Origin: Magallana gigas
Taxonomy: Eukaryota
Reading direction: 5' to 3'
Length of the DNA: 64,000 nucleotides
Assembly: GCF_963853765.1 (NCBI RefSeq)
Contig: NC_088854.1
Coordinates: 19,406,001 to 19,470,000 of the forward strand
Positions 4,101 to 29,187 of the stretch are shown in pieces. The notes beneath the pieces were generated by a model. The model saw nothing but the letters and a program-made list of their open reading frames with translations, searched no databases and was not told the DNA's origin. Position numbers and translations under genes: made by a program. The stretch's first letter is position 1. Every line of letters begins with the position of its first letter.

Positions 4101-5478
4101 GGTATCTCACTGAATCCTAAAACTTTTGAAAAATAACCTGCAATAACACATATATTTTACAAAAATCAATTGTTTACAGTTTCAGGAACATGTAGATTCC
4201 GAGTGTCCAAATAAAAAAGTGAAGTGCATTGCAGGATGTGAAGCGGTAGGTTTGTCGACACATACAAAACTTGTGTTTGTTTATTGAATTCTTATAGTAA
4301 AATTCTTTCAGATAACTTATTATATATGTTATATATATTGACAGTGTTTTCATTAAAATGTAGGTCGAAAGACGTCGATTTATTTCTCACATTGAGGAAA
4401 AGCCTGGCTTTCACATTGAAAAGATGATGGACCAATTGAGAGAACTAACGAACTCTATTACCGGAGAAAAATTGCGGCATTTGGGTGAGGATGTTGAACA
4501 ATTGAAGCAAACAATGTCCCTCAGTAACGGTAGGCAACAAAATGGAGCGAGCGGCACCAACGGGTTGCCTAGCTACGATGAGGCACAATCAGCGGAAGGA
4601 GCTGGAATCAACACTGACGCCAAGAAATTCGCAGCGGTCGAAATCAAAGTGGGGACATTCGAAGGAATCGTAACAACCCTACACCGTGAGATCGAGCGGG
4701 TTCTCAATGTTCTGGATGACCGTCAAAAAGACATGGAAATTATAAAGAGAGACTGCGAAGAAAAAGCAAAGAAAATTGAGGAGCTGGAGAGAAAACTGGC
4801 CTACAGCGAGGTACAAGTGACACAACTGTCCCAAAACGTTCTCTCTAAGGATAATTGTTCCTTCAATGGCGAACTGGTATGGCGTATTGAAAACTGGAGC
4901 GAAGTACGGGCGAAAGCTGTGGCGGGAACAGTTACTAGTTTATTCTCCCCGCCATTTTACACGTCTAAATATGGCTACAAGATGTGTGTCAGGTATGTCT
5001 CGGAAATGATCGATTCAAAAGATCGCATACCTGCTAGAATATCATTAAATTGCAATGTTTCACAGAAACGTTGTTTATTGGTCTTTATCATTATTTTCCC
5101 TCGTTTTGGAATTTTATTCATTGCCATTTTTTCTTTCTTTACCACAGGTTATACCCAAATGGTGATGGCATGGGCAAAAACACACATATTTCCATATTCT
5201 TCGCCATTTTGAGGGGTGACTACGATGCAATTTTGACATGGCCCTTTTCTAAGAGAGTCATCTTTACAGTTTTCGATCAAAGCGGCGGGGCTCCTGTCAG
5301 GGATTCGTTTCGAACAGACCCCAACAGTTCGTCATTCAAACGGCCGACAACAGACATGAACATAGCTAGCGGGTGTCCCCTATTTCTACCGCTGTCCCGT
5401 TTACAAGGAAACGGTGGTTTCGTGAAGGACAATGTTATGTTTATCAAAACGCAGGTGGAAGATGTTCCAGGTCAATGA
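1193..5478 (+). CDS. TRAF: TNF receptor-associated factor, TRAF2/TRAF3-like (RING, five zinc fingers, coiled coil, MATH); exons 1193-1356, 1836-1917, 2644-2742, 3369-3527, 3978-4052, 4180-4245, 4364-4992, 5148-5478; 534 aa
   Basis: All introns are GT-AG and the exons total 1605 nt in one open frame. RING CNAC...CGHRFCREC...CNSC, LFPDNALRRE motif, Cys/His TRAF zinc fingers, and MATH motifs SLFSPPFYTSKYGYKMC, LYPNGDGMG and SSSFKRPTTDMNIASGCPLF. Orthology to TRAF2 versus TRAF3 cannot be resolved by eye. Confidence 0.95.
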
Positions 5479-12000: not shown

Positions 12001-15000
12001 ATTTCTCATTTAAGAATCAAATTACTTGAATTCAAAAATTAAGAAAGGATTTAGAATTTATTCAAAGTACCACATGTATACTTAAATTTTGCAAAAAAAT
12101 AATACATATACATGTATAACATTATCATGTTTCGCAATAAACCTGTTGTGTCCTATCCAGTTGATATCGTAGTTTTTGGTAATTTTTTAAGAATGGATAC
12201 AGGTATTGGTATGCTAAACATTGTATAAGAATAGTTGTGTTAGGAGAAAAATCATGTTGTTCCTTCACAGTGTTACCCCTGGTGTGATGGAGCAGACTCT
12301 TCTGTACCTGTATGGAGGTGTAACCGACCTGATAGACAGCTGTACGCTCAGTGAGCTAATCATGGTAGCGGATATGTACGGGTTGGACGGCCTCAGGGAT
12401 GTCGTTTTGTATAACCTGCGGAGAGATTATTGCCATTTCTTCCATAAGGTTACCAGTTACTGACATATCTTGTATTATGGGGTAGAGGGATAAGGAAACT
12501 CATGTTCAGTGACATAACTGATGTCATGTCTGCTTGTGCAAGGGAAAACTTCAAAAAAGGAGATAAATTTTGTTATTCAAAAAGTGTTACTTTTGACAGC
12601 TGTTTTGTAATTAAGATTTATCTTGTGAAGCATGAAAGATATGAATATGTGTGGGAAGTTGTGTATGTCTTTATAATTATCAGAAAAAAACTGCTGTCTA
12701 CTTAGAGGACAGTACCCTGAGACAATTTTTTGCATTGACTTTTGTCTAAATACATGAATATTTGAATTACATACATGTATCATATGCGGAAAGATGACTT
12801 CTCAAGACATAATCAATTATATTACCAAGAGAACAAAGTTTTAAGTTATGTACATGTACCTAACCTGTAGAGAGCAAATTCTTAATCAATTAAATACTCT
12901 TTTATACATGTACATAAAGTATATAAGGCACATGAAGGTTTTTAGATGTAGAATAAACTGATCGTTTATTTTCAGCCCTGTTCTGTCTGTGAGGAAGGTG
13001 TACTGATAACCCTCTGTCTGACTGTCACATACAACATGGCAGAAATGCAGGAACGGTGCACAAAATGGATTAACAATCATCGCATCAAGATCTGGAGGAC
13101 AGAGGCATTTGCTCGATTGCCACCAGAGATTATTGAAATTTGTTACAATACAGCAGCATCTAGCATGGTAAACAGCTTGTATTGTATTGAATTGTTGTAT
13201 TGAATCATTTATATTCCTGATGGTGCAATTTTCGTGGTGTTTCAATTTTTTTTTCCTTTTACAAGTACCCCAGTCCCACAAATTGACATATTCTACAAGT
13301 TGATGAGGGACTATAATTGGTATTGTCAAATATCTGCCCCCAATTTTAACCAAATTCTAAACAGAGTCGTATGAAAATCAAATCTTCATAAATCGTTGTA
13401 CAGAGGATGCCTATCACTTTAATCTTGATTTTAGTCATCATTGCTCAGTCGCTGTTTATCTATGACATCACCGGAATGACAGAATTCCCGCCCTTTTGCA
13501 AACAAATGAAAAATTTTTCTTTATATTTTGCATTCGGAAGTATAGAGCGCAGGTCTGCTCAAGTACGATTTTAAGATATGGTTTTCTTTATATGAAAATA
13601 CAAATCATACTAAAAAGAGGTACTTGAGTAAGCCTGCGCTCAATGTTTCCCAGTGGAAAAACCCTCAGAAAACACCTATATTTTGCTACAAAACATCAAT
13701 TTATCAAAATAAGACAATCTTCATGACGTCATTTCTACATCATGACATCACTTTGGAGACAACCTTTTTACACACTGGTTTTCAATATGATTTCAACTAT
13801 CTTCTGCCTTATTTTTAAAGCTTTTTAAAAATCATTAATTTTGGAGGCAAAAAATGCATAATACCACACATAGTCCTTTTATCAATATTCATTAGAATAA
13901 TCCACAAAATAAATAATTCCTATAAACCTTAAAAAAAAAAAAAAAGTAATGTCAATTTTCAAAAACTGGCTCTCACAAATTTAAGTGAATCCACGGTAGA
14001 CAAGGTTAACGTAATAAGTCTTGTTAGATACATTATTTGATTTTAATCCACTATAATCATTATTGTAGGATATTTCTAATGTCATCCGAGTAATGATGGA
14101 TTGTCAGAGAATGAATCGAACCATTCCTCATTTAAAGCACAATGAGACTGTTCTCCACTACATCACTCTGCTGATGGACAGTGCCACGGAATACACCAGT
14201 CAGAACTTCAACCACCTGATCAACAGTCCACATTTCATCAATCTTGACAAGGTAGTCATCTTTCTCATCATTATCTGGTGAATTCAACATACCAGGCCCC
14301 AAGATTAAAATTGAGAACAGAATTAATTCAAAATTTACAACAAACATTACTTTCAAAATAAATTTTTGGTTCTCATGTCTGCTTTCTAAATTTTACAAAC
14401 TTGTAATTTTTCAGAAATTTTTTGTTAAAAAAGGAATCAAAATGCTTGATATCTAAAATTTGACTAGCCAGTTAGTCTGTTCTCAGTTTATGGTACACGT
14501 ACATGAATTACCGATGGTATCGAGGTTTGGTAATGAGTATGACTTGCCAGCAGGGTTTTTTTTTAAATGAAATTTTCAAATTGCAATCAATGAGTTGTTT
14601 TCAATTGCAGGACCTTGCCTTTAAGATTGACTTGCTGGAGGAGCTATTTGAGAGTGTGATAAAGTCTTTATCCATGAAAACAGCATGTCTGGCGTATGTT
14701 AGTTTGACCAAGGTTTACAAAAACGTGACAGAAGGGGGAGAATATTACCTTTGTTATGCTGGTGAGGTAAGGACTACAGATAACAACATTTTTTATTACT
14801 ATATAAGAGTTTTTCAAATATTTTTGTACATGTTTCTGTTCAGGGATAAAATTAAGCTGAAAGTTGACTTTTAATGTATTGTTACATGTACCGGTATATG
14901 TACAGTACAATTTATGTTACTTGTAAAAATAGGCACAGAAACTCTGGACATAGAAATACGTAACTCCTATTTATATTAATTATCTTACAATTTTGTTCAA

Positions 15001-16035
15001 TAAAGTGTGTTCTCTGCTTCTTTTCAGTTCATATATTTTTTATTAAAATTTTTTTTTGCAGAACTGTAATATAGGCGAGAAGTTTATTTCCTCTCTTCTG
15101 AAAATGTCTGAAGCTTTCTTAAAGATGCACATCCACCAAGTGATTAACACTGAGAACTGGGATCTACTTCCTAAGGATTTCCAAACACACCTTCTAGCAA
15201 GTATGTTAAATTCTCTTGAGGGCAGAAAATATTTCTCATTCTTCGATTTTTATAAACATTCGTTACATTCAAAGACTAGTGTTTGGCTCATGGGAATGAG
15301 ATTTGCTTTGTGCATGTACATGTATAAGCTTGCAAATTAAAATCTTTTTTAGCTTCCAATTTTGTATGGGTGGAAGGGTTTTCAAAAAGCAGGAAAGCAC
15401 CTCCAAAACTTACCAGTATGCAAGAGGTAGGAGTCTTTATTCTTTTTTCAGGAGGAACACAGCAAGATTCCATAGATGATGAAAATTTAGTGCATTTTGC
15501 AAAATATTGGGGTTGTTTAGATTCAAAAAAAGTCTAGTACATGTAGTAAATTAAGTTGAAAGATTTTTATAGATAATTTCTTTTACAGAAATCCAGTCCT
15601 CATAGTGAAAAGCAAGGTGCTACCCAGAAATCAGTGACTGACAAGAACTTGGCCACATCATTAACCAGTGTTGGTGGAGACTCTTCCAGGAGACAGGTCA
15701 CGAGACCCCCAAAACCACTCCCTAAAAAAACAAACCAGAAGCTTAGCTCTACAAGCACAAAGGGTGGTCAACTGAAACAAAGACTCAGTCCATGTAGTAG
15801 TGTAGAGAGCATCTCTTCAAGAGGAAGTGTCTCTACTAGAGGGAGTCAGTCCTCTACCAGAGCAAGTCCTACAGAGTTTGGGCCAGTGGTAGGCAATGGC
15901 ATTTTGCTGGCTGATATTCCGTTAGAACCAGTCAATGATGGAGTGGCTCAAAGAGCCATTTTACCACCATCTATACACTCTATAGAACAATTACAACCAA
16001 TTCTTGTATGGGAACAAGTGACTCAAAATAACTAA
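9036..16035 (+). CDS. BTBD8: BTB/POZ domain-containing protein 8-like; exons 9036-9160, 9278-9364, 10505-10615, 10910-11518, 11883-11972, 12271-12448, 12976-13167, 14069-14251, 14611-14766, 15062-15200, 15353-15426, 15589-16035; 796 aa
   Basis: All introns are GT-AG and the exons total 2391 nt in frame. Motifs ERSRLKLTLAKQMQKDIG, EEIHSDLTIAVG, LGEDLL, FKAHRSLLTARSAYFEAMLSGSWVES and [28 protein letters not shown] match the recalled tandem-BTB plus BACK architecture of BTBD8. Confidence 0.92.
13306..13878. mobile_element. Non-autonomous DNA transposon (MITE) in BTBD8 intron 7
   Basis: Degenerate terminal inverted repeats agggactataattggtatt / aataccacacatagtcctt. Confidence 0.45.
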
Positions 16036-17509: not shown

Positions 17510-17802
17510 TTCTTACAGTTTTTTTTCACCAGAAAGGGTTGCAATTTGAAAAGCTTGTTGATTTGATAAAGCATTTTCATCTAAAATGCAAACACAATTA
17601 TTTCATTTATATGCCTGTATTTGAGCAATACATTGTGTTTGATATAGTACAATTTTATGTATGAATATGTGTATTTCATTGCTCTCAAAAAGAGGCAAGA
17701 ATTCTAGATTTTTTTTAAGAATTCTGTTGATACTTTTGTTTATGAATATCTGTGATATCATTTGTTTTGTTAAATTGTTTGAGGTTATTTTTCCTTTACA
17801 GA

Positions 17803-17956
17803 ATGAAACTTTTACAAGTATTTTTTTTTTCGAAACCTCTTTTATGCAGAATAAAACATATAAATCTGCCATCAGCGTTGTTTCTTAAACCATGCGGTGG
17901 AATTAACCGCATGGTACCGATCATCAGATCAACGCTTAGGCTAGCTATTTTACCAG
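17803..17956 (+). CDS. Candidate first coding exon of small-protein gene C (MKLLQVFFFSKPLLCRIKHINLPSALF...)
   Basis: Follows acceptor ttcctttacag. Aligns without gaps to gene A exon 1 (K.LQV...L..R.....LP.A, 9 of 26 identical). Possible donors are phase 0 at 17913 and phase 1 at 17956. The hydrophobic core is interrupted by K and P, so it is a weak signal peptide. Confidence 0.35.
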
Positions 17957-18623
17957 GTTATAAGGCATTAGACTCTACAGTTTCATTAATAAATCATATA
18001 TTACATAAATGAATAGAGAGCTCTAGACTGGAGGCGCTTCTGTAGTGTGGTCAGTTCCTCTGATCCCCCACCAGGGAACACACATGCGGCCGTCAGTAAA
18101 TTTCCAGTAACTCTGATCTATAATAATCAGGTAATTAATCCTTTTTTTCCTTTTACTTTTAACCTGAATTACCGGTGTGTACGAAAAAAATCCCTGTTGA
18201 GATAATATCACGAATAGTCGTGTTGAAAACCAAGAGAAGTTCAGATGGTAAATATCGTTTTATTTCTTTCGTCAGGTCTGTAAATTTTAAAGGGAAATAT
18301 GAATTATTTTACGAAATATACCTCAAAACTATAACTTATCTCTTGTTTTAATGAACTTTTATAGTATAATACTTTAATTTGATATAAGAATTTTCTTCTG
18401 AAATCTTGATGTGACGGTATATCGTTGAAGTTTTGACCCTTTGAAGCTTATATTGAACTGCATTAAATTGCATTAAAATCAAATTGCAGTAGAATAAGGG
18501 TACTAATTTTGGCTTTCCGTTATTTGTTACAGCGAAAAAGAGCACTACAAAAATCAAACACATTATTTCTAATGAGATTGTGTCCATTAATTAATTGGCG
18601 CTTTATTTATTTTCACATGTTAA

Positions 18624-19137
18624 AGGGACTTGGACACGATTTGAGATCAAATTTGTATTTTTTATTTTTATGTATAAAATGGTTTGCTTGTGCATTTTGA
18701 ATTATTAAACAAAATATAAATGTTAGATGTCAAGTGTCTAGCGAGATACAGACATAAGAATTCATTGCTAAGTAAACAAAGCTCGAGTCTTATATTTGTT
18801 TACAAATAATATAAAGTAAAGAAATTACCATTTATTTGACAAGTGACTTGTGGCAAACAAGATAAACTGATTCAATGTGTTCATAAATAATATTATCAAC
18901 AAAAGAAAGCACTTTTTCATTGAAACTTATACCAATACAACACATATTTAAATAATAACAAGACTCAAGCTTTGTTTACAAAACAAAGAATTTCAAACTC
19001 TGTATCTTGCTTATAACTCAATATTTGATTTTAACATTTTGAGGAAGCAAGAACAATATCCATATTAACCATTCTAGACATTAAAAATGGAAAAATAAAT
19101 TTTGAAAAATTTGAGCTCAAATTGTGTCCAAGTCCCT
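18624..19137. mobile_element. TTAA-flanked (Kolobok-type) non-autonomous DNA transposon
   Basis: TIRs agggacttggacacgatttgag / ctcaaattgtgtccaagtccct; flanks ttaa / ataa. Confidence 0.75.
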
Positions 19138-19165
19138 ATAAGTTATCATATGGATTATTTTTCAG

Positions 19166-20292
19166 GTTCTGAATGTAAAGGATCTCTTAGCAAGTCCCGC
19201 GAGACGGATGACTTATTTGGAGCCCGAGTGTAAGTAGTACTGTTACTAATCCATGCTTGGACCTTACGTCTTACGTCTCAGCTGAAATATAGCCTATATT
19301 TACGAGTGATGCAGGCACGTAGCAGACACTTTTTGGCGTGGGAAAGATTTTATTTGATGTTTATATAAAAATATGAATTAACATGGAGCCCCCCCCCCCA
19401 CTTTTATTGGGCCATATAAAAAACTGATTTGAAAATAAGGAAAGAAACAAAATTGAAGTTATAGGTATACGTCGATACTTTGCCCCCCCCCCCTCCCACA
19501 CAGACACACGCTTTTAAAAACGATACTACGTGCCTTTGATGTAGTACATGTCTTATACAGGTTTTTACAGAAGAAAAACATCAGTGTGATTTACTTTATG
19601 ATCTATAAATATACAACGAGGATACTTTTCTTGAAAGAGGATAAAATGAAATGACGAATACTCGTGTTAAACGGAGGGTATGCTATGGGGGTCAAGACTT
19701 GATTTCGATAATTTTACTGTGATAATTAAATAAATTAGAATTTGAACCCCCGACCCATTCTAGATCCGTGCATGCATACATATTTATCTTTAACAAAACT
19801 AATGCATATAGAATATCGTATTTTAGAAATATTTTAATATTAAAGAAATAGGGATTGAGCAAAACATGGGCGTGATAAAATCATAATAACTATTTTTTTT
19901 TTACATGGGTCTTATAGTTCACCCGTACGTGTACTGTCTGCCACACACGTTTACTTCATTGATCAGTGATTTTTTTTTTTTTGTACATATGCCTTTTTGT
20001 TCACCCGTACATGTACTGTCCGCCACACGCCATTACTCCATTCATTTACATGTATTTTATTTTTCTGTACACAGGCCTTATAGCTCACCCGTACGTGTAC
20101 TGCCCGCCGTACAAGGAAGAGGATGATGCATGGGGACTCCTTTTTCTACTTGGTCTCGTTTTGATACTAGGCGAGAAATTTGCTACTGATGGTACAAATC
20201 TTGTGAACGACATAGCGAAAACCACTGCAACCACACTGATAGGGACCCCTGGTCCAATCAGCATTTTACTACCGCCGATTCTTTTTAATTAA
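19166..20292 (+). CDS. Small-protein gene C, 3' part; exons 19166-19229 and 20075-20292; first exon uncertain
   Basis: Strong splice sites (ttatttttcag, gtaagt, tgtacacag). Read from phase 0: VLNVKDLLASPARRMTYLEPE|C-LIAHPYVYCPPYKEEDDAWGLLFLLGLVLILGEKFATDGTNLVNDIAKTTATTLIGTPGPISILLPPILFN*. The Cys codon is split T|GC, as in genes A and B. Confidence 0.6.
19313..19535. mobile_element. Short MITE-like insertion
   Basis: 10-bp TIR aggcacgtag / ctacgtgcct with poly-C tracts inside; no clean target-site duplication. Confidence 0.4.
19900..20110 (+). repeat. Three degenerate tandem copies (about 80-85 bp period) of the gene C last-exon acceptor region
   Basis: tcacccgtacgtgtactg core at about 19919, 20000 and 20086; copies read LIVHPYVYCLP, LFVHPYMYCPP and LIAHPYVYCPP. 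Confidence 0.85.
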
Positions 20293-20920
20293 AATCAACG
20301 CATGTGTTACAAATTTTTGTTGTTATTTCAGTGAATTTATTAGTGATATTTTGATTTAGCGAGAAGAATTGCTTTATTTTGGATTCTATTGGGTATTTTC
20401 CTACCAGAGAGTGCGCAAGCTTTACGTTATGCGTAGATTTACTAAAGCTGACAGCATAGCATATATTAGCATAATAAAATGATGAGATAATTTTTTTTAA
20501 TTGTCTCGGTAGGATATGCCTCTTCCTCTAAACAAAAGTCAAACGCATATTAATTAACTCTTTCAACAACGACACCGGTATGTCTAGTTTATTGCAGTTT
20601 CATTGATTTTCTCGTGGAATTTTTAGACATGGGAGAACTAACGTGATACTGGCATAAACAGTGGCAGTGGGTTTTGTTACATTGCATCATAAGAACACAT
20701 TTGCATGCACGTCTAGTATTTTATTTGATTCTGAGAGAAACACTCTTGGAAAATACACTGTAGTCCTCCAAGTCATGGTACTGACAAGGCACCGGTGAAT
20801 TCTAGTATTTACGCAGCCGCTGTTTACATTTTTTATGAAGAAGTTTTCAGTTATATTGGTTATCATTTCACAATAAACAGAATGCAGATATGAGTTTTAA
20901 TCCCAAGTCGATACAAAACG

Positions 20921-23556
20921 CTAATTTGGACCTGGCCCGGGACCAGGCCCTGGGTCAGGGCCGGGGTTAGGGCCGGGTATGATGGTGTCCATAATTTCTA
21001 CGATGATTGGTGTGGACGACTGCCAAGGAATACAAAGCAGATAAAATATAAACAGTAACAAGAGTTTTTTTCTGTCTTTGTCGACTCTATCGCACTGTTG
21101 ATAAACGCCATTTACCAAACCTGCAAATATCGAATACATGTGCATATAGTATATATATACTGTGGTGGTCTAGCGGTATTTGAAATAAATAATTGTCAAA
21201 GTTTACTCTTTGCGATTCATCAATAAACATTCTTAAAAACAAAATTTGTACATTACAAGATGCACCAAAAACCGTTTGCATTCGCTTATTGATTCGGACA
21301 CAATGAACAATGTAATGATCAGCAAATACCTTATAAGTTAAGGATAACTTTAATAAGAGTAAAATCATGTCTTAGTTTAATGGAAGGCAAATACTATTTA
21401 ACACAGCAACACACTTTATCGATAATTAACATATAAAACATCAATGTATGAAGAGAACAAAAGCGGTGACATGTCGGCACCTTGGCAAACATCTACTTTA
21501 CACAAGATTTATATCGTCAGTATTTACCTACTGATCATAAATACTACATCTCTAATGCATTGTTCATAATCTATGCATTTATAAGTTCTGTTTCAATTGC
21601 AAACCTATTAATAAATCGATCAAGCGAATGTGTTTGTTAAATTTTTTGGGGGGTAAATATACATGTAAGGTCAAACTGAAGCACTGAAACAACAACGAGT
21701 TTCCTTTATTCTGATACGTACGTTTAACAATACAAATAACGCTACAAATCGACAGTTTTCTGTTAATATCCTTGCACATATTTTTAAGACAATGTAAAAC
21801 GTCATCGGATTCACCGATGGATCAAATCATAGACATTAAATGTTATAAGTCTGTGATTAAATGTAAAATTCACGCGGTCACGCTCTCTATAAAGGGATTA
21901 TTGAAAATTTGTCGGTATTTTACTAAAAATCTTCTCAAAAACCCATTTGGCTAGAAAAACTGAAAGTTTTGTAGAAGCAGGTAGTGTAGTTCATATCATG
22001 GTCCCCAGGACGGGGTGGAGGCACAATGTGGAGGGTTTTTACATCTTAAATAAGAATTTACACAGAATTATTTAAAAATCTTCTCAAAAACTGATTAGCA
22101 TTAGCAAGAAAAGTTGTACTTTTGATCCTAGCTCGGATAGTGTTGATTAAAGTTTATTCACATTATAACCTTGGGGGTTAGGGTGGGGCTACAATTAAGA
22201 GTCGAAAATTTACACAGGAATATTGAGAGAAAAATCTTACAATCTTCCTCAAAAACCATTTGGCCAGAAAATCTGATACTTGTGTTGAAGCATCCCCAAG
22301 TAAAGTAGATTCGACTGTGGGGTGTGGGCACAAGGGGTCGGAAATTTTATATAGAAATAAATATCATCAAAAATACGGTCAAAAATATTTTTCTCTAACA
22401 CTGAAACAACAAAAGGAGCCCAATTTTTTACTTAGGTATATTTGGAGAAATTTTTTAAATCTTTAATTTTATAAACAAGATATCTACTAAGTTGTATATA
22501 GATACTTTGTATTTGATACTCTAAAAACTGTCCAAAGCTATTCTGGTCAGTTACGGCAGAGACATAAATAACAGAGATCGGCAACTCCGCGATTAGCGTG
22601 TTTAGTTGTTGAAAAATGGTATGGGACCAACCTTACTTTGAGAACTACATTTTAGTAAACTGAGATAATGATCTTAAACCAAAAGTATATTGTTTTAATG
22701 AAAAGTGTGCTTAGGTTTTAGACATTTTTGAAACATAAAATAGAAAAAAGAGATTAATATAATTTATAGAAAATATATTGGCCAGTTATAAAACATCGGC
22801 GAAATCTCGGACGACGGGTAGCCAACTGCCCTCTAAAACTCCTCTTTTAATATTGTTTATATGACATAATATAAACTCATGAAAATATAATATTTTGAAT
22901 GTTTATGTAATAGGTTTTAGCTCTTTATATTTCGATAAAATTGTTTATTATTGATTTAAGCTGGGAACACTTTACAATAGAGACAGCGGGATTTCGCGAG
23001 ATTACGATCAGTTGCAAATCTCTGTTATTTATTTCTCTGGTTACGGCTACTGTTGCTCAAGTGAGCAAAGGGGCTTCTGAGCCTCTTTTTTGTTACTGGT
23101 TTTGTTCTGTTTTTGTTGTTGTTGTTTTTTTATTTATATTTTTTTATGGGGGGGTTGGGGTTGGGGTTGGGGGTTGCCTGTTAAGATGAGATATAGGAAT
23201 GGGTGCTGCCCTGACCCCCCCCCCCCCCCAAATTTTCTTCCTAGACCAGATAATTGTTACACTTTAACTATGCAACGTGTTAGATACATGGTACATGTAG
23301 GGAGTCTCTGTTGATTTCTTAACTTACACTGGAAGGTGGCCATTCTTTGAGTGAGTTGGTTTTATTCATACTAAGGTTAATACTGTAAACACTAAACACG
23401 GTACTTACATAAATTGTTCAGATATTCATTCAAAAGTATATTTTCAGCAGAAGCATCAAAGCTTGCTCCGTAGATAGCGCCGGGTAATTGTTGGGAACTT
23501 CTGCGAATGAACAGCGTTCCGAGGATTAATAACACTTGCAGACATTTTTTCGCCAT
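20921..23556 (-). CDS. Small-protein gene A, 115 aa; exons 23556-23409 and 21120-20921
   Basis: MAKKCLQVLLILGTLFIRRSSQQLPGAIYGASFDASAENILLNEYLNNL|C-LVNGVYQQCDRVDKDRKKLLLLFIFYLLCIPWQSSTPIIVEIMDTIIPGPNPGPDPGPGPGPGPN*. Acceptor ctacctttcag lies just before the ATG, donor is gtaagt, last-exon acceptor is atttgcag, phase 1 matches. The Pro-Gly tail uses varied codons. Confidence 0.8.
21900..22420. repeat. Degenerate Cg170/HindIII-like oyster satellite, about 3 units of 150-167 bp
   Basis: Recurrent aaaatcttctcaaaaac, tggc(t/c)agaaaa.ctga, gtagtgtag and gggggttagggtggggctacaa blocks at about 21925, 22074 and 22241 resemble the recalled Crassostrea 166-bp satellite. Confidence 0.6.
22546..23051. 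mobile_element. MITE-like element with about 35-bp imperfect TIRs
   Basis: cagagacataaataacagagatcggcaact pairs with agttgcaaatctctgttatttatttctctg. Confidence 0.5.
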
Positions 23557-23802
23557 TTACCTGAAAGGTAGGAAAACGTATAAATACAGGTTAGTTTTGG
23601 GGGTTATTTTTACAAAATTTAAAACAAAGTGTCCTTTACATGTGATGGATGCAACGAGTTATAGTTAGCATGGTGAATAGTGTGGAATTAAATGGTTCAA
23701 TCCTTTGAATATCAACTATCATAGTCAATGAGCTCTATCATCTCACAAATTGGACTGATTTATGTTACACAGTACATTTAAACATTGAATGCTTATTTTT
23801 GG

Positions 23803-23913
23803 ATGTCGTCGGTCCTGTCACACACCAAGCGGTGCACACAAATTGAATACCGGGCGTTAGCGCTGTATGATAATTTGTATGCACCGCTTGGTGTGTGACA
23901 GGACCGACGACAT
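23803..23913. repeat. Near-perfect hairpin, 42-bp arms and 27-nt loop
   Basis: atgtcgtcggtcctgtcacacaccaagcggtgcacacaaatt versus aatttgtatgcaccgcttggtgtgtgacaggaccgacgacat, one mismatch. Confidence 0.95.
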
Positions 23914-24016
23914 TTGGCTGTTCCATGTATGTTTCATATCCCTGACTAAGAGCGTATAGAATGACTTTACAGCGACAATACAAAGTTATTTCATAAAAAA
24001 CACACATAATTATGGC

Positions 24017-24280
24017 TATAAATATAAACATTGAATGCTAATTTTTGGATGTCGTGGGTCTTGTAACACACCAAGCGGTGCATACAAATTATCATACCGC
24101 GCTAATGCACGGTATTCAATTTGATAAACATGTACTGTATTGGTACATATAAATATAAACATTGAATGCTAATTTTTGGATGTCGTGGGTCTTGTAACAC
24201 ACCAAGCGGTGCATACAAATTATCATACCGCGCTAATGCACGGTATTCAATTTGATAAACATGTACTGTATTGGTACATA
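24017..24280. repeat. Two identical 131-bp tandem units related to the adjacent hairpin
   Basis: Units 24017-24147 and 24148-24278. Confidence 0.95.
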
Positions 24281-25751
24281 TATACTTAACACAACTACTG
24301 AACTACTGAGTTCTCAATGTATATCTTCTTTTAGAGGAGCGTGCTGGGGGGGGGGGGGGGGGTGGTACAGATATATATCTTTAGATGCTGGGTAGGGGAC
24401 CTGTATTGATCACTTGGCCCTGGTGAATACATGTTGGAGAGGGGTCAGTATGAAGCATTGTAGTGAAATAATCACCAGAAAAGCTCTGCAGGTATGAGAC
24501 GCCTCTATACTGAGACGTACTTCCTATCGAAATAAACAATAAAATCAACTCTATAATTATAATATTGTTACCGACCAGTGTAATGTAGCAGAGCGTTAAC
24601 TACAAATCTGTAAGTCAGGAGTTTTAAAATTTTGTAATACATTTTTAAATGGTTAAATGTTGTAAAATTTCAAAATCTTATACCGGTGAAAGTCGTTTGA
24701 TTATAATGTACTTTCATTCACATAAAAATCGACAGGTGTCCCATACCACCTTAATGTCAGGCTCAGAGTAGGGATACGAATTGATCAAACATCGCGATGT
24801 GATGACCACAAAGAAAATTTGCGAATAAAGCATGAAAAATGCCTATATTAAGACGGATAAGATTCTGATAAATAAAGATATCAAAAAACCTTATAATTCT
24901 TTTGAAGTTCATACAAAACAATGTATATTAAACATAACAACGATTTAAAACCCTTATATATAGATGAGTTCGATACTTGGGATATTGATGATTAAATGTT
25001 GATGATTTAAACTGGTGTATGCGTATCAATCCCCCAAAATGTCATTTTTTTAGAACTTTGATTCTTTTTTATAAAGTGGTTCTGTGCTAGATAATTTTGC
25101 CATTGTCTACTAGAGGTCCGATAGAAAACAAATCGATTTTGATCGACAAAAACGTGGAGTGATGACCCAGTATACATTAAAAGTGTCATTTTGCATCACA
25201 AGAAATTAACAATTTAGAAAAAAAAATATGAGTCCGTTAATTCGTGGCTAAAGTCGCATATAGCATTTAAATAACACATATCTATCCTCGTGACTGAACT
25301 TAGTAGTTTGAGCCCAAGACATATGGAAACCTTTTAGAACTAGGCTATTTAGGTTGAGGGTTCGATACCAACAAAATTTTGGAAAATAACTTTTTCTTAT
25401 CCTTTGTTAACTTATACATCTACATGTATATTTAAACTGAATATAGTTAGAAATTGAGCTTTTGCCCACATGTATTATATTTTGCTTTTAAAAAATGCGT
25501 TTTCTTGCCTTCATTAAGCTAAACGCCATTCTTCGTTTATTAATGCCGTTATTGCACCAGTTTATTCTATATTTAATATTATATGCTTTTGTATGATTTG
25601 AAGACTATTTCAATCTCCTTAAAACAAGAGCTCTGTATAAATTTATCCTGTCTCCCTGCCCTACCCATGATAAAAATATGTTGCATCGGAACATATCATA
25701 TCTTGCAAAATAAACGTCTAACTGGTATTAGTATGTTAAACTAGCCCTAAA

Positions 25752-26642
25752 AGGGGCATAGTCACGATTTTGGTGAAAGATTATTTTTCGGGTTTTAATG
25801 TTTACAATGCTTCAGTAAGGAATTTTTTAAGGCAACCAAAATTTTATTGTCATTCGTTAGTTATAGGCGATATACAGAGCTACGAAATTCACGTGACAGA
25901 CAACATATAAGGAGACGGTCAATTTGCACCTTAAAATATTTTTTTAAAGAGTTATCTCCCCTTGATAAAAAACAGAAAAATTTAAATTCCTCAAAATATC
26001 TGCGGTAAATGAATCATTTTATTTCATATTTTAATAAAGAGAAAGTTTATGTTGAGTTAAATGCAAAATTCAAGGTGTAATTAGTTGGACCAAAATAAAA
26101 ATTTTGAAAATTCCTCTGGTGGAGTATTTTTATTTGATAACACCTTCAAAATGATATCATGATTAAGAATATCGGACCACTCATTTCATAGGTACAAAAT
26201 GATGTCGTTATACATCGAATACCTTAAGTGTCCTTTCCTATATATTTAGTAATGCTGTATATTTTATTTGATAAAATTAAATATATCTGAAAGGACATAA
26301 GTAAACAAAGATTTTGTTTACATTATGAACGTTGAAGTAAAAATTCCAGTTTTAGACCTAAAATGAATGTGTTAAACGTTAAGAACTGTTTATTTATGCT
26401 TAAAATGAATAAGAACATAGACAAATCAGCTTGAATAAGATTTTTATTGGTATATTGAACCCATGTAAACAAAAAAAGGGCGCGAGCCTTGTTTACATGA
26501 CAAAGAATTGTGAGCCCTTTACATGTATCTTGCTTTTAACTCTACGACTGACTTTCCAATTCTATTTGGTCATTACAAATGCATTCCTAAAGTAAATAAT
26601 AAAAAAAAGAAAGAATTTGACTAAATTCGTGACCATGCCCCT
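25752..26642. mobile_element. TTAA-type (Kolobok-like) non-autonomous DNA transposon
   Basis: TIRs aggggcatagtcacgattttggt / actaaattcgtgaccatgcccct; right flank ttaa. The right arm is the reverse complement of the related copy at 30930. Confidence 0.75.
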
Positions 26643-27195
26643 TTAAAGCAATAGATTTTTTTGTGAAAATGCAATCTCTTACTAAAAAAACATTTATTAA
26701 TTATCTTCTATCAATGTTATTCAGAATAATAATACTCTTCTATCAAAGTTATTCAGAGGCCCAAACTGAAGCAAAATTACATTATTTTCGCTCTGTTAAA
26801 TAATTGGTTTGTTATATTTTTTCCTTTGAGGATAATTTTCAGCTCATATTATAAAACACAATACTTGTAATGGCTTTATCAAGTCATAAATTACCTTTTG
26901 TCGTTTTAAACAATGCATACATTCATTTTCCGTTTACATTAATCTTAATCCAGTTTTGAACACAATATGAATATCCACGGTCTATCTTGCTTAATTGCTA
27001 ATGAGAGAATTTCTTGCGGATATGGATATAAATGACATAAAGCGAATACCGCCAAACCTGTATAGGTAATAGTGCGGTAAGATTGAGACAGGGAAACACG
27101 CGTGTATCGTGTACGCTTATGTCAGTTACCAGTACCCGACGTAATACAACTGTAGGAGAAACATTTTTTATCAATGTGTGTGTTTCTACATGTAT

Positions 27196-27198
<3 letters not shown>

Positions 27199-27240
<42 letters not shown>
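27199..27240. repeat. (AG)n microsatellite
   Basis: 21 AG units. Confidence 0.98.
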
Positions 27241-27242
<2 letters not shown>

Positions 27243-28085
27243 CGCTTCATGTTTCCTTTTCAAATTGGAATCCAAATTGTTCAACTTATGAAGGGCCTAA
27301 ATACTCTTTGATTGAGGAACTTACATGCATTACTACAGTAACTGATTCTTTAAAGACACTTTAGTTGACAATGTCCCACACACTTTGAAAAGAAAATCAA
27401 AGTTTGTTTTGGGGACTAAGATATATCACAGACTGATCAACGTTCTTTTACTTTTTCTCTGACGAATTAACTCTCCTTTCTAACAATGATATGATTTTAA
27501 GTCTAAGAAGTTGGTTTATGTTCTGACACTTACAGATTTTGCATCATACAAATGGAAATATATTTTGTTTGGTCAGTTCCATTTTCTTAGGATATGATTT
27601 GTTGGCGTACTTTATTTATGACCAAGCTGTCCCTTATTTTATTTTTTGTAGGTAACTCGAATGTGAACATTTATTCAAAATGCATATTACCGGTGTATCT
27701 TTGGAAAAGAAATATGAGGAACCTTCTTCCTGCAGTGATTTTGAGCGGTATACTTGTGTTTAGAATGCACCTTTATTTGTCCTCTCTTTGTCCCCAATGA
27801 CGGCAGATCAACTTTGCAATTTTTAGAAGAAGACAAAACAACTAACCGTACTGTCCACTAACTCAAAATGAAGTTTAAAAATTTATTGTTATGAATATCA
27901 GTGACAAACATGTTGATGTACCTTATAACGAACTTTGCAAAGACAAAAAATACAGGTCCGTCGATTTGGGCCCATTTAACTTTGAAAATTGCTTTCAAGT
28001 GCGTTGCCACACTTAAATATCATCTCTGGAACATGCATGAGCTTAGTGAATATTGTGTAAAGACGCTTAACTTTTTCCATAAACA

Positions 28086-28215
28086 NNNNNNNNNNNNNNN
28101 NNNNNNNNNNNNNNNNNNNNNNNNNNNNNNNNNNNNNNNNNNNNNNNNNNNNNNNNNNNNNNNNNNNNNNNNNNNNNNNNNNNNNNNNNNNNNNNNNNNN
28201 NNNNNNNNNNNNNNN
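28086..28215. other. Assembly gap (130 N)
   Basis: Run of n characters. Confidence 1.
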
Positions 28216-28652
28216 GCTCTTCATTGCCCGACACTTTAATAATCCATGTTGGTATTTCAAATTCAATTGCAATGGGAATATAAAACAAGATTACTAGACG
28301 TAGTGTATTCCGTATTGCTTGTTCATTTTCTATATTAATATAAAACTAATGAGATAATTTTGTATTGCAACCTCGCTCCGGTGTTATGAAAACTTCAAAG
28401 TATCATACAAATTTCGATGAAAATACTGCACGGTGTTTTCGACGTTCTTGAAAGTTTTGCATGCATTTAAAAGATGAAAACTCTTATCCTTCATGATTAT
28501 TTACTTTATTAAAACCAAATGTAACATTTATTTTCTGACAGTATACTGTTTTTGGCTTTTTGCATTATATATTAACTTATTAAATCAATAAATAAGACTA
28601 GATGAAAACAAAGGTGATATGGCGATTGAACAGCTAGGGTGGTGGTGATAGG

Positions 28653-28982
28653 TTAACCAGCGGGGGTGGGGGGAACAGGGGTCGTGGTTGGTGGCGCGGG
28701 CGTGGTGGGATCCGGAGGGTCGGGGGTCAATCCATTTATTAATTCCACCATGATTTTGCTCATTGGAAGCAGTAGAAGTAAGAACAGCAGTAGTTTCCGG
28801 TCCTTTCTAGTTTTTGGTTGACATAGTGGGATCGCATCTATTCCAAGGAAAATATAAACTTCGCCATCGTACGCCGTGCCTGTGAAAAATATTAAAAGTT
28901 TACAGATACGAATACGATTTAGTGACGCTTGGGACAAGGGGTATGCTTTATTGACTACTGCCAAATCAAGTAACACCCTAAC

Positions 28983-29026
<44 letters not shown>

Positions 29027-29187
29027 GACTTACACAATGTATTAAGATACTCCTCAATAAGTGCACTCTGGAAAAAACTGTTGTTATCAAGATAAAGATT
29101 CTGGTTGGAGGTTGGGACCGGAAGTTGCGCTTTTCCAAAAATCACAAGAAACCCCCAAATCACGAACAGAATACGCACAGGTTTCAT
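28653..29187 (-). CDS. Small-protein gene B, 126 aa; exons 29187-29034 and 28879-28653
   Basis: MKPVRILFVIWGFLVIFGKAQLPVPTSNQNLYLDNNSFFQSALIEEYLNTL|C-TAYDGEVYIFLGIDAIPLCQPKTRKDRKLLLFLLLLLPMSKIMVELINGLTPDPPDPTTPAPPTTTPVPPTPAG*. The 154-nt intron runs gtaagt...tttttcacag in phase 1. The N-terminus looks like a signal peptide ending GKA-Q. Confidence 0.85.
28988..29022. repeat. (GA)n microsatellite inside the gene B intron
   Basis: About 17 units. Confidence 0.98.

What the first reader, a model, noticed from the sequence alone, without database searches (positions are those of the whole stretch)
17803..29187. Hidden cluster of paralogous small secreted or membrane-associated proteins between BTBD8 and UBR4
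Seen in sequence: genes A (23556-20921, minus, 115 aa), B (29187-28653, minus, 126 aa) and C (3' part 19166-20292, plus) share one design. Each has YLxxx followed by a Cys whose codon is split T|GT or T|GC by a phase-1 intron (EYLNNL|C, EYLNTL|C, TYLEPE|C). A second Cys follows; A and C are both C-L-x4-Y-x2-C, and B has a longer loop. Next come a charged linker (KDRK in both A and B), a 10-15 residue Leu-rich segment containing LLF, an I(I/M)VE(I/L) motif in A and B, and a Pro/Thr-rich tail. A and B begin with signal-peptide-like sequence followed by QLP. The motifs shared by A and B use different synonymous codons (AAA GAC AGA AAA versus AAG GAC CGG AAA; ATC GTA GAA versus ATG GTG GAA), and the PGP tail of A is codon-varied. 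Inference: this is an old, protein-constrained, lineage-specific family. It could be a precursor cleaved at the basic site into a disulfide-looped peptide and a hydrophobic/Pro-rich peptide, or a short membrane-anchored protein. I do not recognise it as any named oyster antimicrobial or shell protein.
Basis: partly seen in the sequence, partly recalled or inferred. Interest (0 to 1): 0.78.

Follow-up and report, generated by a model that had tools for sequence, protein, structure and literature searches.

The report
Oyster-specific small protein gene cluster
Between BTBD8 and UBR4 the Pacific oyster has three real, spliced genes for very small proteins; two of them (A and B) are ancient duplicates found only in Crassostrea and Magallana oysters, their function is unknown, and the third (C) is not shown to be related.

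Summary
A (115 aa), B (126 aa) and the 3' part of C translate as stated, with GT..AG introns that split a Cys codon in phase 1. The N gap (28086-28215) lies between A and B and touches no exon.

Spliced transcript contigs confirm A's junction in three studies and both C junctions in two. They add a 5'UTR exon to A and a non-coding first exon to C. B's junction was not tested with reads.

The organism is Magallana gigas. A is already in UniProt as a truncated uncharacterised protein. Crassostrea virginica has the same three genes in the same order between UBR4 and BTBD8, and its A orthologue is annotated as uncharacterised.

A and B do not match by BLASTP. The C. virginica A orthologue bridges them, and profile comparison gives 95.6% probability (E 1.3e-8), above every shuffle control. 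C is not supported as a member (4%). It is a strongly constrained 80-aa protein with one hydrophobic segment and no signal peptide.

No Pfam, PDB, Atlas or literature match, and no other copy in the genome.

Most likely A and B are small proteins with a cleaved signal peptide, anchored in the membrane by one pass. That function is inferred, not shown.

Modest interest: a new orphan family of an ordinary kind.

The parts
26895..26959 (-). Gene A, 5'UTR exon. It extends further 5', to about 27010 in run X9. Donor AAAAG|GTAATT.
   Evidence: Transcript contig L015 maps here. Loose ends behind 23562 in X1 and X9 match this stretch.
23409..23560 (-). Gene A, first coding exon. ATG at 23556. It encodes the signal peptide, the QQLP start of the mature protein and the NILLNEYLNNL helix, and ends with the T of the split Cys codon.
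   Evidence: A spliced joint 21120/23409 is seen in contigs of X1, X5 and X9.
20649..21120 (-). Gene A, last exon. CDS 21120-20921, stop included. It encodes the Cys loop, the basic cluster, the Leu-rich segment, IIVEIMD and the PGP tail. The 3'UTR runs down to at least 20649.
   Evidence: P0004, a 115-aa product of a public transcript contig, differs from this model at 2 residues.
29034..29187 (-). Gene B, exon 1. It encodes the signal peptide, the QLP start, an NNS sequon and EEYLNTL, and ends with the T of the split Cys codon.
   Evidence: The C. virginica orthologous exon (L023:7150-7309) is 53% identical, E 2.5e-16, with the same T|GT split. No read evidence was obtained here.
28653..28879 (-). 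Gene B, exon 2. It encodes an 18-residue Cys loop, RKDRK, the poly-Leu segment, IMVELI and a Pro/Thr tail, then the stop.
   Evidence: Open and 80% identical in a related oyster (P0001). 53% identical in C. virginica, E 6.5e-21.
18044..18130 (+). Gene C, first exon, non-coding. It has no in-frame ATG, and a related species carries frame-breaking indels here.
   Evidence: Joint 18130/19166 in contigs of X1 and X9..
19166..19229 (+). Gene C, exon a. The probable start codon is at 19208 (MTYLEPE + T of the split Cys codon).
   Evidence: Joints. MTYLEPE is kept in the related species, where two of its seven codons differ only synonymously.
20075..20309 (+). Gene C, last exon. CDS to 20292, stop included. 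It encodes LIAHPYVYC, an acidic stretch, a 15-residue hydrophobic segment and the invariant FATDGTNL.ND.AKTTAT motif.
   Evidence: dN/dS 0.07 against the related species. 57% identical in C. virginica, E 8e-24.
28086..28215 (.). Assembly gap (N) in the intergenic DNA between A and B. Not part of any gene model.
   Evidence: The flanks lie in the same order on single contigs of a relative. The gap was not filled.
19893..20108 (+). Tandem repeat of 82-84 bp, 2.6 copies. It duplicates C's last 3' splice site and the HPYVYC-coding start of exon b. Only the last copy has the AG acceptor.

Best explanation
The interval between BTBD8 and UBR4 holds three real, spliced, protein-coding micro-genes, conserved in order and orientation between Magallana gigas and Crassostrea virginica.

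A and B are paralogues from a tandem duplication older than the split of those two genera. I found the family only in these oysters.

Each of A and B encodes, in order:
- a cleavable signal peptide;
- a mature N-terminus starting with Gln (a possible pyroglutamate);
- a 25-30-residue variable segment;
- a helix ending in EY(L/I/F)NxL-Cys;
- one disulfide loop, 18 residues ancestrally and cut to 8 in the Magallana A gene;
- a basic cluster;
- a Leu-rich hydrophobic helix with an invariant Pro;
- an acidic I-x-V-E-I-x-D stretch;
- a tail of PxP repeats.

Inferred mechanism, about 45% within this statement: the signal peptide takes the N-terminal part across the ER membrane, and the Leu-rich segment then stops transfer. 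The products would be type I single-pass membrane proteins of about 95-105 residues, with a tiny disulfide-looped ectodomain and a short acidic, Pro-rich cytosolic tail that could dock partner proteins.

C is a separate 80-aa protein under strong constraint, with one hydrophobic segment and no signal peptide. It is at most a very remote relative.

Shown here: the gene structures, the splicing of A and C, the A/B homology, the synteny and the selective constraint. Inferred: signal-peptide cleavage, the disulfide, the membrane topology and any function.
For: Gene models and splice sites.

Splicing: spliced contigs support A in three studies and C in two. An independent 957-nt transcript contig encodes a 115-aa A.

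Orthologues: the C. virginica A orthologue XP_022328488.1 matches at E 4e-19. The syntenic C. virginica locus carries genes of 122, 128 and 118 aa between UBR4 and BTBD8. My reconstruction of the A orthologue equals P0055 exactly, and my B orthologue model has the 122 aa of the called gene. The phase-1 split of the Cys codon is kept in both A and B.

A/B homology: hhalign gives 95.6%, E 1.3e-8, score 44.7. Column shuffles give 10.0+-2.2 (whole alignment), 22.3+-4.3 (within 10-column windows) and 25.1+-6.1 (within 6-column windows). None of the 40 shuffles in each set reaches the real score.

Constraint: against C. virginica only the protein sequences of A and B are alignable, not their DNA. 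dN/dS against a nearer species is 0.34 for A and 0.07 for C.

Membrane reading: the best 19-residue Kyte-Doolittle window scores 1.61 (A), 2.33 (B) and 1.88 (C. virginica A), against the usual threshold of 1.6. The AlphaFold2 model places helices on the signal peptide, on NILLNEYLNNL, on the Leu-rich segment and on IIVEIMD, and leaves the tail disordered.

Flanking genes are confirmed.
Against:
- dN/dS for B exon 2 against the nearer species is 0.71, which is weak constraint over 69 codons.
- The basic cluster lies on the N-terminal side of the hydrophobic segment. For a type I protein that is the luminal side, against the positive-inside rule.
- The hydrophobic core is only 8-15 residues. The C. 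virginica B segment contains K, K and D and scores 1.31, below 1.6.
- B's Thr/Pro tail looks like an extracellular O-glycosylated stalk.
- The AlphaFold2 model has low confidence (pLDDT 48.9).
- I had no SignalP or DeepTMHMM. The signal peptide is judged from its charged start, hydrophobic core and small residues before the cut.
Confidence: 0.6

Rival explanations
1. A and B are secreted prohormone-like precursors. After the signal peptide is removed, a convertase cuts at the basic cluster. That would release a disulfide-looped peptide of about 40-55 residues with an N-terminal pyroGlu, plus a hydrophobic, Pro-rich C-terminal peptide.
For: The signal peptide is followed by a conserved Gln. There is one conserved Cys pair. 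At least one dibasic pair (KR, RK or KK) lies within 9 residues after the second Cys in all five sequences.
Against: The site is not conserved in sequence or position: KDRKK or KERKK, DKRKR, RKDRK, RKNLK, EKRDNKYLK. No Gly for amidation precedes it. The part after the cluster holds most of the invariant columns. A Leu-rich stretch that scores as membrane-spanning in A, B and the C. virginica A orthologue would more likely stop transfer in the membrane than be secreted.
Confidence: 0.15
2. A and B are fully secreted, uncleaved small proteins, for example mucus or matrix components. The Leu-rich helix would be buried or bound to lipid, and the Pro/Thr tail would be O-glycosylated outside the cell.
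For: B's TTPAPPTTTP tail resembles mucin. The hydrophobic segment of the C. virginica B orthologue is too short and too charged to span a membrane (KD 1.31). The basic cluster stands before, not after, the hydrophobic segment. The proteins evolve fast: about 50% identity between the two genera.
Against: The Leu-rich segments of A, of B in M. gigas and of the C. virginica A orthologue reach membrane-spanning hydropathy. A's tail has no Ser/Thr cluster.
Confidence: 0.2
3. One reading: A, B and C are one paralogous family sharing a single ancestral design.
For: The three genes are adjacent, and all three are conserved in C. virginica. In M. gigas all three have a phase-1 intron splitting a Cys codon after YLxxx. 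Cys, hydrophobic segment and Pro-containing tail come in the same order. There are weak cross hits to the C. virginica C tail (E 0.03 and 0.28, with composition correction off). hhalign scores lie 2-3 sd above shuffles.
Against: hhalign probability is 4%. The A/B profile does not find C in the genome, and the C profile does not find A or B. C has no signal peptide, and its flank before the hydrophobic segment is acidic, not basic. The shared C-L-x4-Y-x2-C arises from a derived deletion in A. C's upstream exons are not conserved in C. virginica. The selective regimes differ greatly (dN/dS 0.07 against 0.34-0.71).
Confidence: 0.3
4. The open frames are chance features of non-coding transcripts or decaying pseudogenes.
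For: The open frames are short. B has no read evidence and a dN/dS of 0.71. Raw polyA RNA reads of run X21 do not cover any of the exons.
Against: Frames, splice sites and intron phase are intact in two genera whose flanking DNA no longer aligns. dN/dS is 0.34 for A and 0.07 for C. In C. virginica the A orthologue has NCBI accessions, and genes of 122 and 118 aa are called at the B and C positions.
Confidence: 0.03

Closest known systems
Crassostrea virginica uncharacterized proteins LOC111127560 and LOC111127533 (XP_022328488.1, XP_022328454.1; 128 aa)
   Same: Orthologues of gene A: 45% identity, E 4e-19. They share the two-exon structure, the T|GT split of the Cys codon and the position between UBR4 and BTBD8.
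   Different: They keep the 18-residue Cys loop that Magallana A has shortened to 8.
Magallana gigas A0A8W8KUS6_MAGGI (UniProt, uncharacterized, 102 aa)
   Same: This is gene A itself, 98% identical over the shared part.
   Different: The database model starts at an internal Met and lacks the first 13 residues of the signal peptide. Transcript contigs support the 115-aa form.
FXYD ion-transport regulators (Pfam PF02038, ATP1G1_PLM_MAT8)
   Same: Applies to gene C only. Both are very small single-pass proteins with a short aromatic and acidic N-terminal part (HPYVYC against PFxYD, the latter from memory) and Gly residues spaced along the hydrophobic segment.
   Different: The score is 11.8 bits against a cut-off of 26.9, and it covers the hydrophobic segment alone. 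None of C's orthologues matches. C is not a member.
Neuropeptide and prohormone precursors
   Same: A signal peptide, Gln at the mature N-terminus, one disulfide loop and dibasic residues after it.
   Different: There is no conserved KR/RR site, no amidation Gly and no repeated peptides, and a membrane-grade hydrophobic segment follows the basic cluster.
Small single-pass proteins with Cys-containing ectodomains and Pro-rich cytosolic tails, such as WBP1 and VOPP1 (recalled from memory)
   Same: The overall layout: signal peptide, short Cys-bearing ectodomain, one hydrophobic segment and a Pro-rich tail.
   Different: No Pfam family of any kind matches A, B or their orthologues at E up to 10, apart from a signal-peptide-only hit to DUF1459 below its cut-off. 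There are no PPxY motifs.

Membership tests
A/B family (defined here: M. gigas A and B plus their C. virginica orthologues) | Significant sequence relationship between the A-type and B-type proteins. | tested here: met
   hhalign 95.6%, E 1.3e-8, 63 columns. The score of 44.7 exceeds all 120 column shuffles, including those within 6-column windows. Pairwise BLASTP alone fails.
A/B family (defined here) | Two coding exons, with a phase-1 intron splitting the first Cys codon directly after EY(L/I/F)NxL. | tested here: met
   M. gigas A and B. C. virginica A and B.
A/B family (defined here) | Gene C belongs to it. | tested here: not met
   hhalign 4%. Genome profile searches do not find C with the A/B profile, nor A or B with the C profile. 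Only a weak excess over shuffles.
FXYD (PF02038), considered for gene C | Pfam score at or above the gathering cut-off of 26.9 bits, including the FXYD motif. | tested here: not met
   11.8 bits, E 0.16, hydrophobic segment only. The C. virginica and related-species orthologues give no hit.
DUF1459 (PF07312), considered for gene A | Pfam score at or above the cut-off of 23 bits. | tested here: not met
   13.6-16.1 bits over residues 1-37, which is the signal peptide. The C. virginica orthologues give no hit.
Type I single-pass membrane proteins (a class, not a family) | A cleavable N-terminal signal peptide. | tested here: inconclusive
   A and B and their orthologues have a charged start, a 12-14-residue hydrophobic core and small residues before a conserved Gln. 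No SignalP-type tool was available.
Type I single-pass membrane proteins (a class, not a family) | A hydrophobic segment able to span the membrane (19-residue Kyte-Doolittle mean above 1.6). | tested here: inconclusive
   A 1.61, B 2.33, C. virginica A 1.88, but C. virginica B 1.31.
Type I single-pass membrane proteins (a class, not a family) | Positive charges on the cytosolic (C-terminal) flank of the segment. | tested here: not met
   The basic cluster stands before the segment, and the C-terminal flank is polar and acidic.
Prohormone / neuropeptide precursor | Conserved dibasic (KR/RR) processing sites flanking the peptide. | tested here: not met
   Basic residues are always present, but the site varies in sequence and position among the five sequences.
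Prohormone / neuropeptide precursor | The processed peptide is detected. | not testable with these tools
   This needs peptidomics.

The most novel reading that the evidence does not exclude
A and B are precursors of a previously unseen class of oyster signalling or defence peptides. Each would be a pyroGlu-capped, single-disulfide loop peptide released at the basic cluster. The loop shortened from 18 to 8 residues in the Magallana A gene, which would change its activity. Gene C, next door, would encode a co-evolving membrane partner.
Probability: 0.1. Interest if true: 0.6.

Novelty: new member of a known kind. Interest (0 to 1): 0.27.

Why it matters
Oyster genomes hold thousands of uncharacterised lineage-specific genes, and few have been checked this closely.

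- **What is new.** A and B form a genuine protein family seen so far only in these oysters. It has no Pfam, PDB or literature counterpart, has been held in one micro-syntenic slot since before the split of Magallana and Crassostrea, and is transcribed (shown for A).
- **Annotation.** The work gives a corrected full-length model for A, where UniProt's is N-terminally truncated. It gives a model for B, for which I found no M. gigas protein record. It also sets the true start and exon structure of C.
- **Follow-up.** The products are small enough for direct synthesis, tagging and topology tests.

This remains an ordinary kind of discovery. No mechanism is shown, and nothing here would surprise a specialist.

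Tried and rejected
- **Pairwise BLASTP** of the exon translations of A, B and C found nothing significant. Paralogy could only be tested after orthologues were found.
- **Own-genome searches** with single exons and with profiles found no further copies. The weak hits (E 0.02-5) are Pro-rich or Leu-rich chance matches.
- **Pfam**, **ESM Atlas** and **PDB sequences** (best hit OadG, E 0.98) gave nothing usable.
- **Paper searches** by accession numbers and by run ids returned no papers.
- **Two strong-looking phmmer hits** are artefacts. P0050 (2350 aa, 41 stretches) and P0053 (982 aa) are translations of tandem repeats in which one weak motif match is added up many times. P0054 matches only the PGPGP low-complexity tail.
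- **AlphaFold2 on A** with the family alignment gave pLDDT 48.9. That is too low for a fold search, so I ran none.
- **Raw polyA RNA reads of X21** (about 1% of the run sampled) do not cover the A or C exons. This is uninformative about silence.
- **The first 379 nt of transcript contig L015** map 8.7 Mb away on the same chromosome. I treat this as a chimeric assembly, not an exon.
- **The upstream exons of the 118-aa C. virginica C gene** could not be resolved. Four three-exon models fit the stated length, and none resembles M. gigas exon a.
The spliced contigs instead start at 18044 and 18058.
- **Joined models of B and C were sent to no search tool**. They were searched exon by exon, by reference. 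For A I used the stored public protein P0004.
- **Earlier findings of this scan** returned only this same finding.

Full report
**1. The observation**

- A: 23556-23409 + 21120-20921, minus strand, 115 aa.
- B: 29187-29034 + 28879-28653, minus strand, 126 aa.
- C, 3' part: 19166-19229 + 20075-20292, plus strand.

All three introns have a GTAAGT donor and a CAG acceptor, and each splits a Cys codon in phase 1 (T|GT or T|GC) right after EYLNNL, EYLNTL or TYLEPE. The listed motifs and the synonymous-codon differences are present.

The program's warning about the N gap (28086-28215) is settled. The gap lies in the DNA between A and B, 438 nt beyond B's stop codon, so no exon or frame depends on it. 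Both flanks align in the same order to single contigs of a related oyster. There the corresponding interval is short, which leaves no room for another gene.

**2. Transcription**

Reads were laid on 17800-23700, which covers C and A. Runs X1, X5 and X9 are transcriptome-sized sets of Logan contigs from three studies.

- Gene A: the joint 21120/23409 is seen in all three runs.
- Gene C: the joints 18130/19166 and 19229/20075 are seen in X1 and X9.
- Raw polyA reads of X21, of which about 1% was sampled, do not touch these exons.

Two additions follow.

- A has a 5'UTR exon at about 26895-26959 or beyond. This rests on the loose ends and on the independent transcript contig L015. The first coding exon starts at 23560. 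The first 379 nt of L015 map 8.7 Mb away and are a chimeric join.
- C has a first exon at 18044-18130 or longer. It contains no in-frame ATG, and a related species carries frame-breaking indels there. In that species MTYLEPE in exon a is kept, and two of its seven codons differ only synonymously.

C therefore most likely starts at 19208 and encodes 80 aa without a signal peptide. The stretch at 17803, where the finding begins, has no read depth. B was not covered by reads.

**3. Identity and relatives**

Searches were made exon by exon, by reference. The joined models of B and C were sent to no search tool.

- **Gene A.** The open frame around A's last exon finds UniProt A0A8W8KUS6_MAGGI, an 'uncharacterized protein' of Magallana gigas (102 aa), which is an N-terminally truncated model of A. 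The same cluster holds P0004, a 115-aa product of a public transcript contig that differs from the window's A at two residues. This also identifies the organism.
- **phmmer of P0004** against 1.84 billion representative proteins gives one real family of hits: C. virginica XP_022328488.1 and XP_022328454.1 (128 aa, uncharacterised), plus genomic read-through frames of the same genes. The two top-scoring long proteins are tandem-repeat translations and are artefacts.
- **Gene B.** Exon 2 finds only an 80%-identical open frame in a related oyster.
- **Gene C.** The last exon finds only genomic frames of M. gigas and of that relative.
- **Elsewhere.** Pfam, the ESM Atlas, PDB sequences and the paper library give nothing.

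**4. Synteny**

The C. virginica locus L023 reads: a 5184-aa gene (UBR4 by position), then a 122-aa gene, a 128-aa gene and a 118-aa gene, then BTBD8 (Pfam BTB and BACK_BTBD8). This is the mirror image of the window.

In the window, UBR4 is confirmed by Pfam from 33398 onward. BTBD8 is confirmed by exons at 12218-16032 that lie in the same order as those of the C. virginica gene.

tblastn assigns B to the 122-aa gene (exon 1 E 2.5e-16, exon 2 E 6.5e-21), A to the 128-aa gene, and C's last exon to the 118-aa gene (E 8e-24). My reconstruction of the A orthologue equals P0055 exactly. The B orthologue gives 122 aa, as annotated. Both keep the T|GT Cys codon split by a phase-1 intron.

At the DNA level, only three kinds of sequence between 16 and 33 kb still align between the two genera: UBR4 exons, C's last exon, and one 104-nt element. 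A and B are therefore kept as proteins while their DNA has diverged past alignment.

**5. Are A, B and C paralogues?**

Pairwise BLASTP says nothing, and neither A nor B finds the other in the genome. The C. virginica A orthologue is an intermediate. It has A's N-terminus, hydrophobic segment and tail, but B's 18-residue Cys loop (DVYLYEGLERIKLC against EVYIFLGIDAIPLC).

Profile against profile, for the parts encoded by exon 2, gives 95.6% probability, E 1.3e-8, over 63 columns. I tested how much of that score comes from shared composition by shuffling the alignment columns:

| Control | Score |
|---|---|
| Real alignment | 44.7 |
| Shuffled across the whole alignment | 10.0 +- 2.2 |
| Shuffled within 10-column windows | 22.3 +- 4.3 |
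| Shuffled within 6-column windows | 25.1 +- 6.1 |

None of the 40 shuffles in each set reaches the real score. About half the score is shared architecture, and the rest is position-specific. A and B are homologous, and the duplication predates the split of the two genera.

C is different.
- hhalign gives 4%.
- The excess over shuffles is only 2-3 sd.
- The genome profile searches do not cross-detect A/B and C.
- C's flank before the hydrophobic segment is acidic, not basic.
- C has no signal peptide.
- The C-L-x4-Y-x2-C motif it shares with A comes from a deletion that A acquired in the Magallana lineage.

I put C's membership at about 0.3.

**6. Constraint and variation**

Against the nearer relative (a species sampled in Logan runs SRR148649xx-SRR148651xx, not identified here), Nei-Gojobori estimates are as follows.

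| Exon | dN/dS | Codons |
|---|---|---|
| A, last exon | 0.34 | 64 |
| B, exon 2 | 0.71 | 69 |
| C, last exon | 0.07 | 70 |

C is under strong purifying selection. Its FATDGTNL.ND.AKTTAT motif is invariant as far as C. virginica. A and B evolve fast.

- A is KERKK in the other A sequences retrieved, including the most often seen ones.
- A common allele of A has two extra residues (VL) in the hydrophobic segment.
- C's LLF is LLL in the other C sequences retrieved.

**7. What the proteins probably are**

The columns conserved across A and B in the species compared are:
- the signal-peptide core;
- a Gln at the predicted mature N-terminus;
- E-Y-x-N-x-L-Cys at the exon end;
- V/I-Y and L-Cys in the loop;
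- a basic cluster;
- two Leu pairs and an invariant Pro in the hydrophobic segment;
- an Ile in the acidic stretch that follows;
- Pro at alternate positions in the tail.

Kyte-Doolittle means over 19 residues reach the usual membrane threshold in A (1.61), B (2.33) and C. virginica A (1.88), but not in C. virginica B (1.31). AlphaFold2 gives only low-confidence helices over these same segments and a disordered tail (pLDDT 48.9). I therefore ran no fold search.

My best reading is a type I single-pass micro-protein with a tiny disulfide-looped ectodomain and an acidic, PxP-rich cytosolic tail, at about 45%. Three things count against it: the basic cluster on the wrong side of the segment, the short hydrophobic core, and B's mucin-like tail. 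The alternatives are a fully secreted protein (0.2) and a precursor cleaved at the basic cluster (0.15). The second is weakened because the site is not conserved and the part after it is the best-conserved region.

**8. Comparison and verdict**

There is no known family to file A and B under. The nearest records are their own uncharacterised orthologues. FXYD (for C) and DUF1459 (for A) fail their Pfam cut-offs, and the orthologues do not match them at all.

The finding is real and largely as described, with these corrections:
- the family is A plus B;
- C is a conserved neighbour of a different kind, or a very remote relative;
- A is already in the databases;
- the precursor idea is the less likely mechanism.

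It is a new orphan family of an ordinary kind, and of modest interest.

Noticed in passing
window 18620-19141: A MITE-like element with 35-nt terminal inverted repeats sits in C's first intron and ends 25 nt before the acceptor of exon a. Its ends are very abundant in RNA contigs and reads: depth reaches 1251 at 18633, with many loose ends at 18620 and 18651.
   Followed up: partly
window 22557-23039: A second MITE-like element, with 30-nt inverted ends, lies in A's intron. A depth peak and loose ends sit at 22557.
   Followed up: partly
window 23803-23913 and 24017-24282: A near-perfect 42-nt hairpin lies just upstream of A's first coding exon. Beside it is an exact 131-bp tandem duplication that carries arms complementary to the hairpin.
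   Followed up: no
window 19893-20108: An 82-84-bp tandem repeat (2.6 copies) duplicates the 3' splice region and the HPYVYC-coding start of C's last exon. The copies inside the intron still read as HPYMYCPPH-like frames but lack the AG acceptor. The related species also has extra copies.
   Followed up: partly
window 17725-17828: This is the only non-coding stretch in 16-33 kb that still aligns to C. virginica (79% over 104 nt, L023:16055-16156). It lies just upstream of an AATAAA at about 17850. It is probably the conserved end of the BTBD8 3'UTR.
   Followed up: no
window 20921-21120 (gene A), public sequences P0002, P0007, P0008: There is a common in-frame two-residue (VL) insertion allele in A's hydrophobic segment, seen on 83 contigs against 112 without it. 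There is also a D/E polymorphism in the basic cluster. Whether both alleles belong to M. gigas or one to a sister species was not checked.
   Followed up: no
window 4424-5209 (+): An open frame with matches to TRAF-type MATH and TRAF_BIRC3-binding domains. It is an exon of a TRAF-like gene upstream of BTBD8.
   Followed up: no
window 27199-27240 and 28988-29022: Two (AG)n microsatellites. The second lies inside B's intron and seems to be where every contig of the related species breaks, which hid that species' B exon 1.
   Followed up: no
C. virginica proteins P0051 and P0055: Two NCBI loci (LOC111127560 and LOC111127533) encode near-identical 128-aa A orthologues. The newer assembly shows only one copy within the 20-kb locus L023, so one locus may be a haplotig.
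   Followed up: no
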